From Paramoeba atlantica (taxonomy: Eukaryota > Protista > Discosea), in contig CDRNVI010000029.1 in NCBI GenBank assembly GCA_977017575.1, forward strand, positions 806,001-870,000: a DNA stretch of 64,000 bases, read 5' to 3'. The position numbers were made by a program, and so were the translations under genes. Of the stretch, positions 1 through 5,598 are shown in pieces. The notes under the pieces were generated by a model. That model saw only the letters and a list, made by a program, of their open reading frames with translations. It was not told the DNA's origin and searched no databases. How positions within the stretch are numbered: the first letter of the stretch is position 1; the number at the start of each line of letters is the position of its first letter.

Positions 1-2204
1 TTGTAGTACCAGGCTACAAAACCAGCGAGGTTGCGACGTTGATTTTCGAAGGATCCGGATTCACTTGCTTCGCTTTTGCGATCGCTATAGATATCGTAGC
101 CCACGTAGATGGTGCCATTTGCTCCAAGCTCCGGAACGTTGCTCGGAATGTCAACCAGCCACAATGGCGTACCCATCTTAGCAGTCACATTCTTCGCAAT
201 GTTGTGAACATAGGGTCCTGCCGTTTTTGCCTTGCTCATCTTGTCAAAGTCTACGAATTGGGAGACGATGCCCATAGACCCCAGTTCGCTCTTCAACGTG
301 CCGTAGGCATCCTGACCACGTGTGCTGTGGCCGTTGCTGAGGACGCATAGCACAAGGGCGGGTGTACCTTCCGCAATGGCCTGGCGTACGGCATCGGTTC
401 GCACGGAGTCCAAGCATTTGTCGATAAAGTCGCGGTCGTCTTCACCACTATCGACGAAGGTGACAGGTCCTTTCGCCTTCCATACGCCACGAATGCGTTC
501 GTTGACATCCATAATTTGACGCACTAAGTCACGAGCCTTAGCACCCCAACCAAAGACTTGGTATTCTTTGCGTTCCTCGTTGAACTGAATCCGCATGGTC
601 TGGGGAGCGAAATCTTGATTCGGGCGGAGAGTCTCTGGAGAGCCAACGATCTGGACTTTGACGGTCTTCATTTCTTTCGGTTGTATGGTTTCCAATGCCG
701 CATTCTTGATCTGAAGGCAGTATCCGCTCAGGAGCTCTTTCGGTTCCTGTTCATCGAATCTCTTCACCAACTTGATACACTGATCTTGCATTTCCTCGGG
801 CATCTTGGAGCATCGCGTCGGAAGGAAGCGTCGTGCTTCAGTGCTTAATTGGTCCACAAGGACGAATTCAGGAATGAGGCGGACGCGGCCGGAGCGCTCA
901 CCCCAGATAAGAGGCTGATCCGTCTTTGTAACCTCCAACCCATACGTCTCCTTGTAGTAATCCGCATAAGAGATCGTTCGTCCGCTCTTAAGCTCGAAGA
1001 CGGACTCCACCGTCGTCCCCTTATCCACTTTGTAGACCATGTAGTTGCGCTTCCTCGTTCCGTAAGACGTCATCACCTTGAGACCCAGCAGACTGCGCGG
1101 CCCGTTCTTGTTGAGGTAGTCCAGCGCAGTTACACGTGCTTCCACATGACTTCGAGGATGAACAATGAGAACAACACCGTTGTCTGTCAACTGGAATGTT
1201 GCAAAGTAACCAGGTACCACAATCATATCGCGATACACACGTTGCCGAGTGAAATCGCAGTATATTTTTCCTGTTCGGCGAAGATCTAATGATTCCAGAA
1301 TTCGGCATAACACATGATTGTACACTTGCATCGTTTGTTCCTCATTAGAGCGGGGGTTGAGTTGCACCTTAGTGATGTCTTCTTTGCGTAGTTCCATTGT
1401 GGTCTTGAAAGATCCAAGGGAGACTTCACGTGAAAGCGGTTCTTGCAAATGTTCGGAGATATCCTCAAGGCAATAAAAGTTAGTTCCAGAGATGATCAAA
1501 TCGAGCTTCTTGAGGTATTCCTTTTCTAAGACTTGGCGAAGATATCCGAATAGAAGCTTCTTACGTTGAATTTCGCTGATGTTTTCATTTTTCTCGATGC
1601 TGAGGGGATACATGTAGACCTCCGCCTTACTGATGGAGACATTGACAGCATTCCACATTACGTCGCGGCATGGTGCACGCTGACGGAGGGCGTCACGTTC
1701 GGATGCCATCAAACGACCACGTTCCGTCCTGTCTTTATCAGCCCAGAAACGATCCCAACAGCCACTGCAACAGCGTTTATTGGGGACGTCCGCATGCTTT
1801 CCTACTCGGCATAACTTACCACAGCTGTCGCATTTGGCGTACTCGCTCCCAATGAAGGGCATCATGCTTCCGGTGCCCGGACCACCTCCCATGGGACCGC
1901 CCATCGGACGGGGACCACCGGGTGCACCACCCGGAGGGCCACCTGGTCGTCCTCCAGGAGCTGGGCCACGATCGTCTCTTCGGTAGTTGTCGTTTCGGCG
2001 ATCATCGCGGCGGTTGTCATCCCGGCGATAGTCTTGGCGCTGGTCACGCGAGCGATCGTCCCTGCGATAGTCGTCGCGACGGTCATCGCGTCGATAATCA
2101 TCACGACGGTCATCGCGCCGATAATCATCACGACGATCATCGCGCCGATAATCATCGCGCCGGTAGTCGTCACGTCGGTAGTCGTCGCGTCGATTGTAAC
2201 TCAT
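1..2204 (-). CDS. Argonaute/PIWI-family protein, 3' end beyond the window (N-terminal RRDD repeats, G/P-rich linker, CxxC-x15-CxxC, N/L1, PAZ, MID, start of PIWI domain)
   Basis: Not in the ORF track (no stop inside the window). Manual translation from ATG at 2204, frame-checked at several points, stays open to position 1 (>730 codons). L1 motif VVPGYFATFQLTDNGVVLIVHP; PAZ motif SYADYYKETYGLEVTKTDQPLI..RLIPEF; MID 5'-phosphate pocket YGTLK..GIVSQFV..NIAKNVTAKMG; PIWI start TPLWLVDIP..IYVGYDIYSD with the first catalytic Asp. Confidence 0.93.
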   Translation of the reverse strand, partial: MSYNRRDDYRRDDYRRDDYRRDDRRDDYRRDDRRDDYRRDDRRDDYRRDDRSRDQRQDYRRDDNRRDDRRNDNYRRDDRGPAPGGRPGGPPGGAPGGPRPMGGPMGGGPGTGSMMPFIGSEYAKCDSCGKLCRVGKHADVPNKRCCSGCWDRFWADKDRTERGRLMASERDALRQRAPCRDVMWNAVNVSISKAEVYMYPLSIEKNENISEIQRKKLLFGYLRQVLEKEYLKKLDLIISGTNFYCLEDISEHLQEPLSREVSLGSFKTTMELRKEDITKVQLNPRSNEEQTMQVYNHVLCRILESLDLRRTGKIYCDFTRQRVYRDMIVVPGYFATFQLTDNGVVLIVHPRSHVEARVTALDYLNKNGPRSLLGLKVMTSYGTRKRNYMVYKVDKGTTVESVFELKSGRTISYADYYKETYGLEVTKTDQPLIWGERSGRVRLIPEFVLVDQLSTEARRFLPTRCSKMPEEMQDQCIKLVKRFDEQEPKELLSGYCLQIKNAALETIQPKEMKTVKVQIVGSPETLRPNQDFAPQTMRIQFNEERKEYQVFGWGAKARDLVRQIMDVNERIRGVWKAKGPVTFVDSGEDDRDFIDKCLDSVRTDAVRQAIAEGTPALVLCVLSNGHSTRGQDAYGTLKSELGSMGIVSQFVDFDKMSKAKTAGPYVHNIAKNVTAKMGTPLWLVDIPSNVPELGANGTIYVGYDIYSDRKSEASESGSFENQRRNLAGFVAWYY
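1972..2192 (-). repeat. Coding tandem repeat, (Y)RRDD x13, in the Argonaute N-terminus
   Basis: 12/15-nt units such as tat cgg cgc gat gat, counted by translation. Confidence 0.95.
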
Positions 2205-2907
2205 AGAATTTGGTTAAAAGTAGTTAAATTTTCAGGTTCCGTTGTATGTCCTTGTTGTATCTGACATACAACAATTAGGACATAATGTCCGAGAAACGAC
2301 TTATTGATGTTGCATGTGATTAAACAGAGAAACTATGGGAGACTTTTATACATTCAGCGAATTGTGGGTTAAGTTGTTTCATATCAGCGAATCACTACAA
2401 GAGTAATCATCATGGAATTTTCTGGAGATACGTGGAAACAGTGTTTCATTGTGACAACCGGTCATCTACAGACTCTCCATTGCATTTTTATCCCCCCAGA
2501 CCCTTTTTTCATTCATTCTCGAGCCAGCAATCCTTCGGAGGTTTCACCTGCTTCGGATTCCGCTCCTTCGATTTCAAGTCCTTCAATCAAGACTTCCCCA
2601 AGTCAGCGAGATCGGATCGCAATCCCTGGACATAGCTACAACAATAATTGTTGTAATATTAATTGGTTAAAAGTAGCTAAGAAGAAAGAAATTAGTGACA
2701 AAGTTTATTGAAATTGTTCATGAGATGAAACCACAGGACCTTTTGAAGCTGAGTGAGCCGGCATAAAATATGGGAAATACATGTATGCATAGACCATGAG
2801 GCTGGTATAGAAGGCGAGTGTGCACTGTTTGGATGTAGTGCGTGAGTTTTTATTGTAGTGGCATGGGCGAAATGAATCTTCGGGAAATGTACAGAAGTTC
2901 CATGTAG

Positions 2908-4860
2908 TTATTCGACCCATCCTGTTAGCCACGTTAATGAATTACTTTGTGAAACTGAAGGTTCATCAGAACCGTTTCGTGTTGCATCATCAGAAAGCTT
3001 TCGATTAGGAGCTTGTGACGGTTCTTTTTTAAGCATAGGAGGCGGAAGGACATGATTAAATCCCTTTAAGATTTCTGGGTGCCAGGGCAACTGTGATGTT
3101 GCTATGCGTCGACGATTAATCGGAAAAGGGAGGCCATGAGTTGATTTGCCTGTACTTATGTCATTCCTGGGAGAATGAGATTCTGTGATTCCTGATTCTT
3201 TTGAAACTTGCGCAGAATTAAACTTTTCCCAATTAAGGTAAGATCCTGCGCTCCATTGCCTAGTGAATAGATCATCACTAAAAGACAAGATAAACCAGTT
3301 GGTAGTTTGACATGTATGTGATTCAGGTGGGTAGAAGTCTGCGGTGTCTGGATAAGTGTCGATGGGACCCAAACAGTGAATGTCTAACTCCAGACAAGGG
3401 TTCACGTGTTGTTCAGGTGGCGTACTGACTTCGACCCCGTCTTCACTGACAAGAAAGGTACAATTTCGTAACACAGAAGAGCTGGCATCCTGTTCGCTAG
3501 AATCCTTGGGAATGAATCTGTCTGCTTCGGTACAAGGTAACAGCTGTGTGCGAACAGGATCTGGTAAGCACTCGGGATAGGTTACATAGCGTGCTAGCGT
3601 TGGATCCAATTTTATAATGTATCGATACATAGAATGATCAATGGACTCTGGAGCAAGCACACAGTTCCTACCGCCGCCCGATACATTATTACTATTACGG
3701 TTTAAGGCGCCCAAAGCGTCCATAGTTTCTTGTCTTTTGAGCTGCAGGGAGGTATGTATTCCCTTTGACTTCAGATAGTTACCTTCTGATTCCATGTTTT
3801 TGAATGCTCGATTCAACAAAGGGTCTTGGCGTCTCGCATAACTCTGAAAGAAAAGGAGTACATGAAGCACTACCATAGTATATTGACAATGTAACGCAAG
3901 AACACGTAGCCCATTGATTTCTTGTGAAGAATATCGAAGCCAAGTTCGATGGTGAAGTTCAACTTCCTGAGACCATAGAAAATGCTGCAACTCCCCAATA
4001 ATAGCTTCGAAAATATCTGGCCTTGTAAAAACAGAACCACTTTTGTTCGTCGTCAAAACCTGGTCTAGGTCCAAAAACCGATACGCAGTTTCAAACGCTG
4101 CGTTGCTGGTTATTCTAGAACACAGGTCGATACATAAAGATGGATCCGAGCCTATTAGTGCGCTGATAATTTCAAAGCTAATGCAGTAGATTGTTTGATC
4201 ACCAATCCACTCCATTCGGTCGAACGCATGACGCTCGTCATCGTAGCTCACGGAAAAGTTAAGGATACCGTAGCGAATGAGGAGGCTCAACGCTTTTCGA
4301 AGGTTCAAACCAGTGAGAACAAGGTCTGTAGGATCGCATAAATCGGGAATGAGCGGAAAAGGTGATGCAGTAGTGCAGCGCCTTTCGGATGATACATGAC
4401 AATAAAGATTTACTGGATATCTACCAAAAGCGAGGAAAGCCCATCTACGTAGAACGCTCTCTCTGCGATGATACGGATATAGTGATAAGAAAGTTTTATA
4501 CATTATACGAGATGTATCGTGTCCTCCAGTTGTCAGATGCTCTCTCAAACCTTTATCTGCCATTGAGTTGCACATCCAACACCAATCTCGTTCAGATTCG
4601 TACCAGAATTCCTTCGAAAAAAAGTAGCAATCAGGGTGCGGATAGGCTTCAAGAAAATCCTCTATGAAAACTTTACCATCAATTGATCTTCTGTCATCAA
4701 ATTTAGAACTCGTTGTATCTATTCTTGGGTAAGGCTGAGATTCACAATTTCCATCAATTGAAAAGTTGTTTCGCTTACCTTCAGCGAAAGGAGAATTTCG
4801 ATTATCACTCTTTTCTTCAAGCTTAGAAGCCAGCAGCCCTCTCGAAGTGCTGAGTAACAT
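2908..4860 (-). CDS. RNA-editing endonuclease of the KREN1/2/3 type (U1-like zinc finger + RNase III)
   Basis: C-x2-C-x10-H-x5-H finger WCWMCNSMADKGLREHLTTGGH; RNase III signature FDRMEWIGD and second motif PDIFEAIIGEL with all four acidic catalytic positions. ATG at 4860 gives a presequence-like MLLSTSRGLLASK (the track extends to 5088). Which KREN paralogue is unresolved. Confidence 0.82.
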   Translation of the reverse strand: MLLSTSRGLLASKLEEKSDNRNSPFAEGKRNNFSIDGNCESQPYPRIDTTSSKFDDRRSIDGKVFIEDFLEAYPHPDCYFFSKEFWYESERDWCWMCNSMADKGLREHLTTGGHDTSRIMYKTFLSLYPYHRRESVLRRWAFLAFGRYPVNLYCHVSSERRCTTASPFPLIPDLCDPTDLVLTGLNLRKALSLLIRYGILNFSVSYDDERHAFDRMEWIGDQTIYCISFEIISALIGSDPSLCIDLCSRITSNAAFETAYRFLDLDQVLTTNKSGSVFTRPDIFEAIIGELQHFLWSQEVELHHRTWLRYSSQEINGLRVLALHCQYTMVVLHVLLFFQSYARRQDPLLNRAFKNMESEGNYLKSKGIHTSLQLKRQETMDALGALNRNSNNVSGGGRNCVLAPESIDHSMYRYIIKLDPTLARYVTYPECLPDPVRTQLLPCTEADRFIPKDSSEQDASSSVLRNCTFLVSEDGVEVSTPPEQHVNPCLELDIHCLGPIDTYPDTADFYPPESHTCQTTNWFILSFSDDLFTRQWSAGSYLNWEKFNSAQVSKESGITESHSPRNDISTGKSTHGLPFPINRRRIATSQLPWHPEILKGFNHVLPPPMLKKEPSQAPNRKLSDDATRNGSDEPSVSQSNSLTWLTGWVE

Positions 4861-5598
4861 TTCTCGTAACGCCGAATTTGAAGACAAAGAAACTGAGTAA
4901 GAAGGGACAGGAGAATTTATAAAGTGACAAGGTTGGGCAACATTACTGTCGTCCTGCACCCCGGAAATATGTGTGGAATATCGAGTTCGTCTGGTATCAA
5001 AAATATAGCTCACTTCAAAAGGCACCAGAAAACATATTCGGTTTCTAATGGCGGCTTGATAAGCCCACGACTGCACCGTCAACTTCATTTCTTAAAATCG
5101 AGTCTGTAGAGTCTGGAAATGAGTTGCCAAAGGATCATTTTTTGAAGGCTTAGCTCTGGCAACTTTTGTACGTGAACGTGCTTACATACCTCAAACTTTC
5201 GCTTACGTGCATCAAACTTTGCAAAACGGATAAAGACAGCTATTCGAACAGTTCTTTCGATATTGCGGGATCGATATTGCACGTACGATATCTTATATTG
5301 TACAAATATTAAAAAAATGGCCTGCTGTATACCTACAGTGCCGGTTTCATTCTCAAAATACATCGATTTCCGAAACACATGTTTCGGCATTGTGCGATAT
5401 TGACTGCATTAGTAATATACAGGTATACTTATACAGGTGTATATTCGTACATGTGAATTTACACATTTTGCGAAACATATTTACAATTTACGAAACAAAT
5501 ATCCTGACGTTGCTGAAGTTCTAGATTAGAAGTTTGGTCGTTGCGTGATAGTGAAAATGTGCATTTTCATTGGCAACACGAAAGTGAACTCAGATGAA

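What the first reader, a model, noticed from the sequence alone, without database searches (positions are those of the whole stretch)
1..2204. Hidden PIWI-type Argonaute with a 13x RRDD mixed-charge tail and a zinc-ribbon-like module
Seen: an ORF missed by the track, with PAZ, an intact MID pocket (YxxxK..Q..K) and the first catalytic Asp. Its N-terminus is MSYN(Y-RRDD)x13, then a GPPGG linker, then CDSC-x15-CSGC. Known: T. brucei AGO1 and animal PIWIs have RGG/RG-rich N-termini that are Arg-methylated; trypanosomatid PIWI-tryp proteins are described as lacking a canonical PAZ; the KMGxxLWxVDIP..VGxD stretch is the PIWI-clade pattern; RD/RE mixed-charge tracts (U1-70K, NELF-E) promote condensates. 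Inference: this is an architecturally unusual, PAZ-containing PIWI that may assemble into granules without Tudor/methyl-Arg binding and may bind Zn. It is a candidate anti-transposon small-RNA effector in a genome visibly full of transposons.
Basis: partly seen in the sequence, partly recalled or inferred. Interest (0 to 1): 0.82.

Follow-up and report, generated by a model that had tools for sequence, protein, structure and literature searches.

The report
Slicer-dead kinetoplastid PIWI with zinc module
This is a real, expressed, multi-copy PIWI-type Argonaute gene of a free-living kinetoplastid; it can probably bind small RNAs but not cut targets, carries an Arg/Asp repeat known from an amoeba Argonaute as a nuclear-targeting signal, and has a conserved cysteine module not described before in any Argonaute.

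Summary
Window 2204..1 (minus strand) is the first 734 codons of a 970-aa Argonaute (P0001). It has a PAZ domain, an intact MID 5'-phosphate pocket and a Piwi domain. The N-terminus has 13 RRDD units, a Gly/Pro linker and a Cys cluster, CDSC-x17-CSGC (not x15).

Transcript contigs from the same species begin with a kinetoplastid spliced-leader tail joined 34 nt upstream of this ATG and end in poly(A). So the repeat lies inside the mRNA's first open frame.

The gene is one of at least three near-identical tandem copies. Earlier notes of this scan flagged the same architecture on neighbouring DNA.

- The catalytic tetrad is D-K-D-S, so the protein is probably not a slicer.
- The architecture is not a one-off. 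Two kinetoplastid relatives (64% and 45% identity) share the Cys module, and one also shares the DR repeat.
- DR-rich plus RGG N-termini also occur in neighbouring AGO1-type and other Argonaute lineages.
- Entamoeba EhAgo2-2 has a published RGG plus RRDDR tail that acts as a nuclear localisation signal.
- In trees the family is a separate clade from trypanosome AGO1, inside a protist PIWI-like group.

The Cys module is the new part. Its fold type and zinc binding remain unproven. Verdict: new variant of a known kind, moderate interest.

The parts
1..2204 (-). Codons 1-734 of a 970-codon PIWI-like Argonaute gene (P0001). The last 236 codons lie left of the window.
   Evidence: Open frame. 100% match to P0001. 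Full gene in L001 10001-12913. AlphaFold2 model of aa 112-970 has pLDDT 91.5 and pTM 0.90.
2205..2238 (-). 34-nt 5' UTR. The spliced leader is joined at 2238/2239. There is no ATG in the UTR, so 2204 is the first AUG.
   Evidence: Transcripts L003, L004 and L005 begin GTTTCTGTACCTTGTTG and then match the genome from 2238 downward, with 7 mismatches in 2238 nt.
1968..2192 (-). Arg/Asp mixed-charge tract, aa 5-79: 13 RRDD units, 8 of them preceded by Tyr; 32 R, 29 D, 8 Y.
   Evidence: Eleven different 12-mers encode the 13 identical units, which points to protein-level constraint. TRF finds 15- and 27-nt periods. There are no length differences among 4 genomic copies and 3 transcripts.
1866..1967 (-). 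Gly/Pro-rich linker, aa 80-113. It is a true RGG box in the 64% relative and degenerate here.
1743..1856 (-). Conserved Cys module, aa 117-154: FxGS-x4-C-x2-C-x3/4-C-x12/13-C-x2-C-W-x2-[FW]-W.
   Evidence: F117, G119, S120, C125, C128, C146, C149, W150 and W154 are invariant in three kinetoplastid species. pLDDT is 76-90 in the full model. The model shows a hairpin carrying the first CxxC, with the second CxxC at a helix N-terminus.
1680..1766 (-). Long helix, aa 147-175, linking the Cys module to the Argonaute N domain.
   Evidence: Predicted as H36-64 in both models, with pLDDT 83-93 in the full model.
858..1100 (-). PAZ domain core, aa 369-449.
   Evidence: Pfam PF02170, E 5e-17. Aligns to the MILI and MIWI PAZ domains.
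177..305 (-). MID 5'-phosphate pocket: Y634, K638, Q649, K676.
   Evidence: These columns are at least 90% conserved in the 82-sequence alignment A2.
3..353 (-). Start of the Piwi domain, aa 618-734, including the first catalytic Asp D704 (window 93-95). K755, D815 and S943 lie beyond the window edge.
   Evidence: Pfam PF02171. Tetrad columns from alignment A2.

Best explanation
The window holds the 5' three quarters of one copy of a tandemly repeated gene in a free-living kinetoplastid. Its trans-spliced, polyadenylated mRNA encodes a 970-aa PIWI-like Argonaute.

Shown:
- PAZ, an intact MID 5'-phosphate pocket, a Piwi fold and the usual ...YYL C-terminus are present, so the protein should load small guide RNAs.
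- Two of the four catalytic residues are replaced (D-K-D-S), so it most likely acts by binding targets and recruiting partners, not by slicing.

Inferred:
- The 13x RRDD tract with its Gly-rich linker is a disordered mixed-charge targeting module. By analogy with the RGG plus RRDDR tail of Entamoeba EhAgo2-2, and with R/D mixed-charge domains in animal cells, it would send the protein to the nucleus or to nuclear or perinuclear RNA bodies.
- The conserved C-x2-C...C-x2-C-W module plus helix, just before the N domain, is a small zinc-binding knuckle that serves as a docking surface for a partner protein or RNA.
- The likely targets are the abundant transposons, some of which lie antisense in the spacers between the PIWI copies.
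For: Gene, domains and model.
Transcription and start codon: three transcript contigs begin with a spliced-leader tail 34 nt before the ATG and end in poly(A), at 99.7% identity to the window.
Tetrad D704-K755-D815-S943, where 68 of 82 relatives have E and 68 of 82 have H. Relatives form a series: D-E-D-H (P0131), D-K-D-H (P0132), D-R-D-G (P0002).
MID pocket conserved.
Repeat under protein-level constraint and kept in frame in a 64%-identical species.
Cys module invariant over three species down to 45% identity.
DR+RGG N-termini recur in four more Argonautes of neighbouring lineages.
EhAgo2-2's DR-rich region is necessary and sufficient for nuclear localisation (PMC6796981).
R/D mixed-charge domains enter nuclear speckles or the nucleolus.
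At least three genomic copies exist, with integrase and HTH remnants on the opposite strand between them.
Against: No localisation, small-RNA or zinc data exist for this protein.
The EhAgo2-2 tract is C-terminal and comes from a distant eukaryote, so function may not transfer.
The RGG box of trypanosome AGO1 mediates polyribosome association instead (PMC8989244).
P0131 has the Cys module but a Pro/Ala/Gln-rich N-terminus in place of the DR tract, so the tract is dispensable for the family's core role.
Fold searches for the module gave nothing significant: Foldseek E about 1, VIA Z 4.6 at best.
The base pair before the splice junction is GG in all genomic copies read, not AG.
All public runs were available only as contigs, so no read-level 5' ends were seen.
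Confidence: 0.6

Rival explanations
1. It is a cytoplasmic RNAi effector like trypanosome AGO1. The charged Gly-rich N-terminus tethers it to polyribosomes or mRNPs, and silencing is post-transcriptional, achieved by recruiting other nucleases.
For: The TbAGO1 RGG domain is required for polyribosome association and RNAi (PMC8989244). AGO1-type relatives P0161 and P0145 carry DR repeats directly before their RGG boxes. The careful tree weakly joins the family to the AGO1-type group, at 82/84 support.
Against: The family and the AGO1-type clade are each 100/100 and separate. P0001's own linker has almost no RGG. The only experimental data for a DR repeat on an Argonaute point to the nucleus. The loss of E and H argues against an AGO1-like slicing role.
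Confidence: 0.2
2. One reading: the RRDD tract mainly drives Tudor-independent granule (condensate) assembly of an active, slicing anti-transposon PIWI.
For: R/D dipeptide repeats condense in a length-dependent way (10.1101/771592). Blocky R/D patterns phase-separate with RNA (PMC9324279). Few RG/RGG methylation sites are present in P0001.
Against: The tetrad is D-K-D-S. Condensate formation and nuclear targeting are not exclusive, so this overlaps with the best explanation except on slicing. No granule data exist.
Confidence: 0.12
3. The N-terminal extension is not part of the functional protein. Translation would start at Met114/115, and the repeat would be a drifting 5' leader. Alternatively, the array consists of decaying copies.
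For: One gene caller started copy C at Met114. One copy, L007, carries three single-base indels. Differences between copies are not biased towards synonymous changes, at 1 synonymous to 4 non-synonymous and 5 to 6.
Against: The ATG at 2204 is the first AUG, 34 nt after the spliced leader. The frame stays open through 167 upstream codons in a 64%-identical species, with the same composition. Thirteen identical peptide units are encoded by 11 different 12-mers. The Cys module lies downstream of Met114 in any case. Two genomic copies and three transcripts are stop-free.
Confidence: 0.05

Closest known systems
Entamoeba histolytica EhAgo2-2 (PIWI-like Argonaute with an RGG plus DR-rich tail; PMC6796981)
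   Same: It is a PIWI-like Argonaute carrying about 12-13 RRDD(R/Y) units next to a Gly/Arg-rich stretch. The E. marina homologue P0003 was found through the repeat itself.
   Different: In Entamoeba the tract is C-terminal with RGG before the repeat. Here it is N-terminal with the repeat before the Gly-rich stretch. Entamoeba has no Cys module. The two sit in different parts of the tree. Nuclear targeting has been shown only for EhAgo2-2.
Animal PIWI-clade proteins (MIWI/PIWIL1, MILI, Siwi, Ephydatia Piwi-A, Drosophila Piwi)
   Same: They are the best sequence and structure matches over N-PAZ-MID-PIWI. The MID pocket and both catalytic Asp residues are shared.
   Different: Identity is only 20-22%. 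E and H of the tetrad are replaced. There are no arginine-rich Tudor-binding RG repeats in this copy. The zinc module is extra. In animals the zinc-finger cofactor GTSF1 is a separate protein.
Trypanosomatid AGO1 (T. congolense argonaute-like protein P0183; TbAGO1)
   Same: Same class of organism. The N-terminus is low-complexity and followed by N-PAZ-MID-PIWI. The careful tree puts both in one protist PIWI-like supergroup at 100/100.
   Different: They are separate 100/100 clades. AGO1-type proteins are equidistant from PIWI and AGO in PDB searches (6e-7 against 2.5e-6), whereas this family clearly leans to PIWI. AGO1 has a pure RGG box and no Cys module.
Arcella intermedia Piwi-domain protein (P0135) and unnamed protist PIWIs (P0134, P0136, P0143, P0150)
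   Same: They are the nearest relatives outside the family by E-value (3e-44, 28% identity over nearly full length), with the same domain order.
   Different: They keep an intact E and H. None shows the Cys module in alignment A2.

Membership tests
Argonaute/PIWI superfamily | PAZ domain | tested here: met
   PF02170, E 5e-17, above the gathering score.
Argonaute/PIWI superfamily | MID 5'-phosphate pocket (Y-K-Q-K) | tested here: met
   Y634, K638, Q649 and K676 lie in columns at least 90% conserved.
Argonaute/PIWI superfamily | Piwi (RNase H-like) domain and overall bilobed fold | tested here: met
   PF02171, E 4e-33. Model pTM 0.90. Foldseek E 2.5e-52 to Hili.
Slicer-competent Argonautes | DEDH catalytic tetrad | tested here: not met
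   The tetrad is D704-K755-D815-S943. 68 of 82 aligned relatives have E and 68 of 82 have H.
PIWI clade (as opposed to AGO clade) | Closer in sequence and structure to PIWI than to AGO proteins | tested here: met
   phmmer: PIWIL1 4e-31 down to Drosophila Piwi 7e-17, against AGO1 2e-9. The Foldseek top 18 are all PIWI-clade.
PIWI clade (as opposed to AGO clade) | Monophyly with PIWI proteins in a tree rooted with AGO-clade sequences | tested here: inconclusive
   The trees hold only the 150 best hits and no verified AGO-clade outgroup. The family sits in a 100/100 protist group with the Arcella Piwi, but the trypanosome AGO1 type is in that group too.
Trypanosomatid AGO1 orthologues | Nested in or sister to the AGO1 clade, with an RGG-only N-terminus | tested here: not met
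   The AGO1-type clade (P0183, P0145, P0161) and this family are each 100/100 and distinct. The link between them has only 82/84 support.
PIWI-tryp (TcPIWI-tryp / TbPWI1) | Orthology to the trypanosomatid PIWI-like protein | not testable with these tools
P0149 and P0155 (weak PAZ, about 1000-1100 aa) may be of that type, but they are unnamed.
EhAgo2-2-type DR-rich nuclear localisation region | At least 5 RRDD(R) repeats adjacent to an RGG/Gly-rich stretch on an Argonaute | tested here: met
   13 RRDD units plus a Gly/Pro linker. The relative P0002 has a true RGG box.
EhAgo2-2-type DR-rich nuclear localisation region | Necessary and sufficient for nuclear localisation | not testable with these tools
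   This needs cell biology in the kinetoplastid.
GATA-type zinc finger (C-x2-C-x17-C-x2-C) | Cys spacing plus the family sequence profile | tested here: not met
   The spacing fits (x17 in two species, x18 in P0131), but there is no Pfam hit even at E up to 10.
ZZ, A20 or ZAD zinc modules | Significant structural match | tested here: inconclusive
   p62 ZZ at Foldseek E 0.8. Rabex-5 A20 plus helix at Z 4.6 and ZADs at Z 3.5-3.8. All are below the tools' noise guidelines. The module model has pLDDT 65 alone and 76-90 in context.

The most novel reading that the evidence does not exclude
Free-living kinetoplastids keep a third Argonaute lineage, lost or unrecognised in trypanosomatids. It would be a nuclear, non-slicing PIWI whose built-in zinc module replaces a trans-acting zinc-finger cofactor of the GTSF1 type. 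Its DR-repeat plus RGG address tag would be a shared, ancient or repeatedly evolved Argonaute targeting device across Euglenozoa and Amoebozoa. The tandem PIWI genes, interleaved with antisense transposon debris inside a polycistron, would form a self-contained small-RNA source and effector locus.
Probability: 0.15. Interest if true: 0.78.

Novelty: new variant of a known kind. Interest (0 to 1): 0.55.

Why it matters
Small-RNA biology in kinetoplastids is known almost entirely from parasitic trypanosomatids. They have a divergent AGO1 and a PIWI-like protein described as lacking a canonical PAZ. This gene shows that a free-living relative expresses a much more canonical, PAZ-containing PIWI-like family in several copies, with its slicer residues decaying stepwise across species.

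The finding extends the DR-rich Argonaute tag, so far described only in Entamoeba, to at least three Argonaute lineages that are probably euglenozoan. Gene callers routinely cut the tag off. That makes its role in nuclear or RNA-body targeting a general and testable question.

The conserved Cys module is, as far as the searches here show, the first zinc-finger-like domain fused to a eukaryotic Argonaute N-terminus. It is a concrete handle for finding partners. Kinetoplastid genomes are transcribed polycistronically, so how a non-slicing Argonaute could silence transposons there is an open mechanistic question.

Tried and rejected
1. Dicer next door. The upstream 726-aa ORF has RNase III-like motifs, but it matches the editosome endonucleases MP61 and MP90, so I rejected it as a Dicer.
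2. Word-index protein searches. The first found only three proteins. The profile search of A1 found nothing new, swamped by low-complexity words. The third went to an organism marker (CTU1), which showed about 57% identity to very diverse eukaryotes and named no species.
3. Rfam on the whole window gave no hits.
4. Pfam on the Cys module alone at E up to 10 gave no family.
5. Fold searches of the module (Foldseek PDB, VIA wide, ESM Atlas shape and feature searches) gave only weak, generic zinc-finger or helix matches.
6. Sequencing runs. All holders are stored as contigs with coded names, so I got no read-level 5' ends, no strand information and no species name.
7. Matveyev et al. 2017 on RNAi loss in kinetoplastids is not in the held library.
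8. Species. Neobodo designis is my guess from memory of which kinetoplastid transcriptomes are public. No tool confirmed it.
Full report
**The observation.** Window 2204..1 on the minus strand is open for 734 codons and runs off the left edge. Pfam finds PAZ (E 5e-17, aa 369-449) and the first third of Piwi. An identical 970-aa protein, P0001, is on record from a public assembly. Its contig supplied the missing 236 codons, and on the full protein Piwi reaches E 4e-33.

The N-terminus is as described:
- It has 13 RRDD units in aa 5-79 (32 R, 29 D, 8 Y). The composition of the rest of the protein predicts 0.0014 such units.
- A 34-aa Gly/Pro linker follows.
- Cys residues then sit at 125, 128, 132, 145, 146 and 149, which gives CDSC-x17-CSGC.

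In an 82-sequence alignment, Y634, K638, Q649 and K676 (the MID 5'-phosphate pocket) and D704 and D815 fall in columns that are at least 90% conserved.

**Organism and expression.** Every ORF of at least 250 aa but one in the window lies on the minus strand, closely packed and without introns. Three transcript-sized contigs from one JGI sample encode the 970-aa protein.
- Each begins GTTTCTGTACCTTGTTG and then matches the window from position 2238 downward, with 7 mismatches in 2238 nt.
- Two of them end in a run of A.
- From my own knowledge, GTTTCTGTAC is the conserved 3' part of the kinetoplastid spliced leader. The transcript of relative P0131 begins AGTTTCTGTACTTTATTG.
- The 34-nt leader contains no ATG, so the ATG at 2204 is the first AUG of a trans-spliced mRNA.
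- The ORF just upstream (5088..2908) matches the trypanosome editosome RNase III endonucleases MP61 (E 5.5e-6) and MP90. That is another kinetoplastid hallmark, and it means the neighbour is not a Dicer.

No tool gave the species name. Run names were coded, and a CTU1 marker was about 57% identical to very diverse eukaryotes.

**Copies.** One public assembly holds three copies:
- One is identical to the window's gene.
- A second lies 13 kb downstream on the same contig and carries three single-base indels.
- A third is intact, on another contig next to MCM5.

The copies are 98.6-99.6% identical to the transcripts and share at least 86 nt upstream of the ATG. They fall into two 3'-UTR types that diverge right after the stop codon: copies A and B share one type and copy C has the other. 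Both types appear among the transcripts, so at least two copies are expressed. The spacer holds an rve integrase and an HTH fragment on the opposite strand. Earlier notes of this scan describe the same architecture 22-24 kb to the left and on other pieces. I could not read those places, so I treat them as leads.

**Relatives and the N-terminal parts.** An exhaustive HMMER search of 1.84 billion representatives gave 1122 hits. Only four are close: P0002 (63%), P0131 (45%) and two fragments. The next hits are at or below 30% identity.
- The transcript of P0002 is open for 167 codons upstream of its called Met. That stretch encodes a DR repeat, a true RGG box and CDGC-x17-CAGCWDRFW.
- The transcript of P0131 encodes a Pro/Ala/Gln-rich N-terminus, a Gly-rich stretch and CTGC-x18-CKSCWSQWW.

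So the Cys module is conserved down to 45% identity, with F117, G119, S120, C125, C128, C146, C149, W150 and W154 invariant. The DR tract is lineage-specific.

Reading upstream of the called starts of more distant neighbours revealed similar N-termini without any Cys module:
- P0161 has 12 PRDDR units followed by an RGG box.
- P0145 has (RRDE/RRGDE)n followed by RGG.
- P0155 has interleaved RDDR and GGG within its called protein.
- P0149 has the same, but no ATG upstream of its called Met, so that case is uncertain.

**Placement.**
- phmmer against PDB ranks eleven PIWI-clade proteins (4e-31 to 7e-17) ahead of AGO1 (2e-9).
- The AlphaFold2 model of aa 112-970 has pLDDT 91.5. Its 18 best Foldseek matches are all PIWI-clade.
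- A careful IQ-TREE run (42 rows, 701 columns) gives the family 100/100 support.
- The AGO1-type clade also gets 100/100. It holds the T. congolense argonaute-like protein, which has an RGG N-terminus, plus P0145 and P0161.
- Only 82/84 support joins the two. Both sit in a 100/100 protist group with the Arcella Piwi, apart from the animal, Dictyostelium and Entamoeba PIWIs (quick tree).
- All of these branches are long and there is no AGO-clade outgroup. The protein is PIWI-like by similarity and is not an AGO1 orthologue, but strict clade membership and its relation to PIWI-tryp remain open.

**The Cys module.** Modelled alone (three sequences, pLDDT 65), it forms a hairpin carrying the first CxxC, with the second CxxC at the N-terminus of a long helix. 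In the full model the same region scores 76-90. The best structural look-alikes are all small zinc domains followed by a helix, but none is significant:
- p62 ZZ, Foldseek E 0.8
- Rabex-5 A20 finger plus helix, Z 4.6, and ZAD domains, Z 3.5-3.8
- generic zinc ribbons in the ESM Atlas

Pfam gives nothing at E up to 10. Zinc binding is therefore an inference from four invariant Cys in two CxxC pairs. I found no paper describing a zinc finger fused to an Argonaute N-terminus.

**Mechanism.**

Shown:
- The mRNA exists and is trans-spliced just before the ATG at 2204.
- The RNA-binding pockets are conserved.
- The catalytic tetrad is broken.
- The Cys module is conserved across three species.
- The DR tract is under protein-level constraint, with 11 different 12-mers encoding 13 identical units.

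Inferred:
- The DR tract and Gly-rich stretch act as a targeting module. The RGG plus 12x RRDDR tail of EhAgo2-2 is necessary and sufficient for nuclear localisation and does not affect small-RNA binding (PMC6796981).
- R/D mixed-charge domains enter nuclear speckles or the nucleolus, depending on charge patterning (10.1101/771592 and PMC9324279).
- The main rival is an AGO1-like cytoplasmic role, because the TbAGO1 RGG domain mediates polyribosome association (PMC8989244).

**Unexplained.** In all four genomic copies the two bases before the splice junction are GG, not AG. Contigs of three runs show a second genomic form with 32 extra bases at exactly this point, which puts AG before the junction. 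That form also has a 1-nt deletion at 2212 that the transcripts lack.

**Verdict.** This is a new variant of a known kind: a PIWI-like Argonaute family of free-living kinetoplastids with a broken slicer site, a known type of DR-rich tag in a new position, and a previously undescribed Cys module.

Noticed in passing
window 2908-5088 (-): The 726-aa ORF just upstream of the PIWI gene has no Pfam hit. It matches the T. brucei RNA-editing endonucleases MP61 (E 5.5e-6) and MP90 over an RNase III-like region, and it has a U1-like C-x2-C...H...H motif. It is an editosome-type RNase III gene, not a Dicer.
   Followed up: partly
window 2237-2239 (-) and runs X1, X2, X5: The spliced leader joins at AACCTG, but GG precedes it in all assembled copies. 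A second genomic form has 32 extra bases here, which creates AG at the junction, plus a 1-nt deletion at 2212.
   Followed up: partly
L001 12914-22913; L007 9966-12919; L006 2866-5778: There is a tandem array of at least three near-identical PIWI copies. One copy carries three single-base indels, which could be a pseudogene or a long-read error. The spacer holds rve integrase and HTH_32 remnants and an RRM fragment on the strand opposite to the PIWI genes.
   Followed up: partly
L009 2407-3000; L013 1-282; L010 3001-3250; L012 2554-3000: Four more distant Argonautes carry DR- or ER-rich repeats plus RGG boxes at their N-termini, mostly upstream of the called start codons. They are P0161 and P0145 in the AGO1-type clade, and P0155 and P0149. 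Gene callers systematically truncate these regions.
   Followed up: partly
window 1862-2173 (-), 1922-2206 (+), 2034-2264 (+); L006 2915-3208: Out-of-frame and opposite-strand ORFs of 76-103 aa lie over the repeat. They are by-products of the periodic DNA. In one public copy such an ORF pushed the called start to Met114.
   Followed up: yes
window 1-64000: 26 of the 27 ORFs of at least 250 aa are on the minus strand, with short spacers. They include SCO1, a short-chain dehydrogenase, an R3H protein, CTU1, NOT3/5 and a UCH protease. This is a single kinetoplastid-style polycistronic unit.
   Followed up: partly
P0003 (Entamoeba marina PIWI, KAL7712523.1): The gene model begins in mid-PAZ and ends with an RGG stretch plus a long RRDD(Y) tail. 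It looks like the EhAgo2-2 orthologue with a truncated 5' end.
   Followed up: no
L010/L011 (ENA ERZ25333188 ctg450_9x_l): The 1096-aa Argonaute P0155 (weak PAZ) is also tandemly duplicated, with two identical copies about 4.1 kb apart.
   Followed up: no
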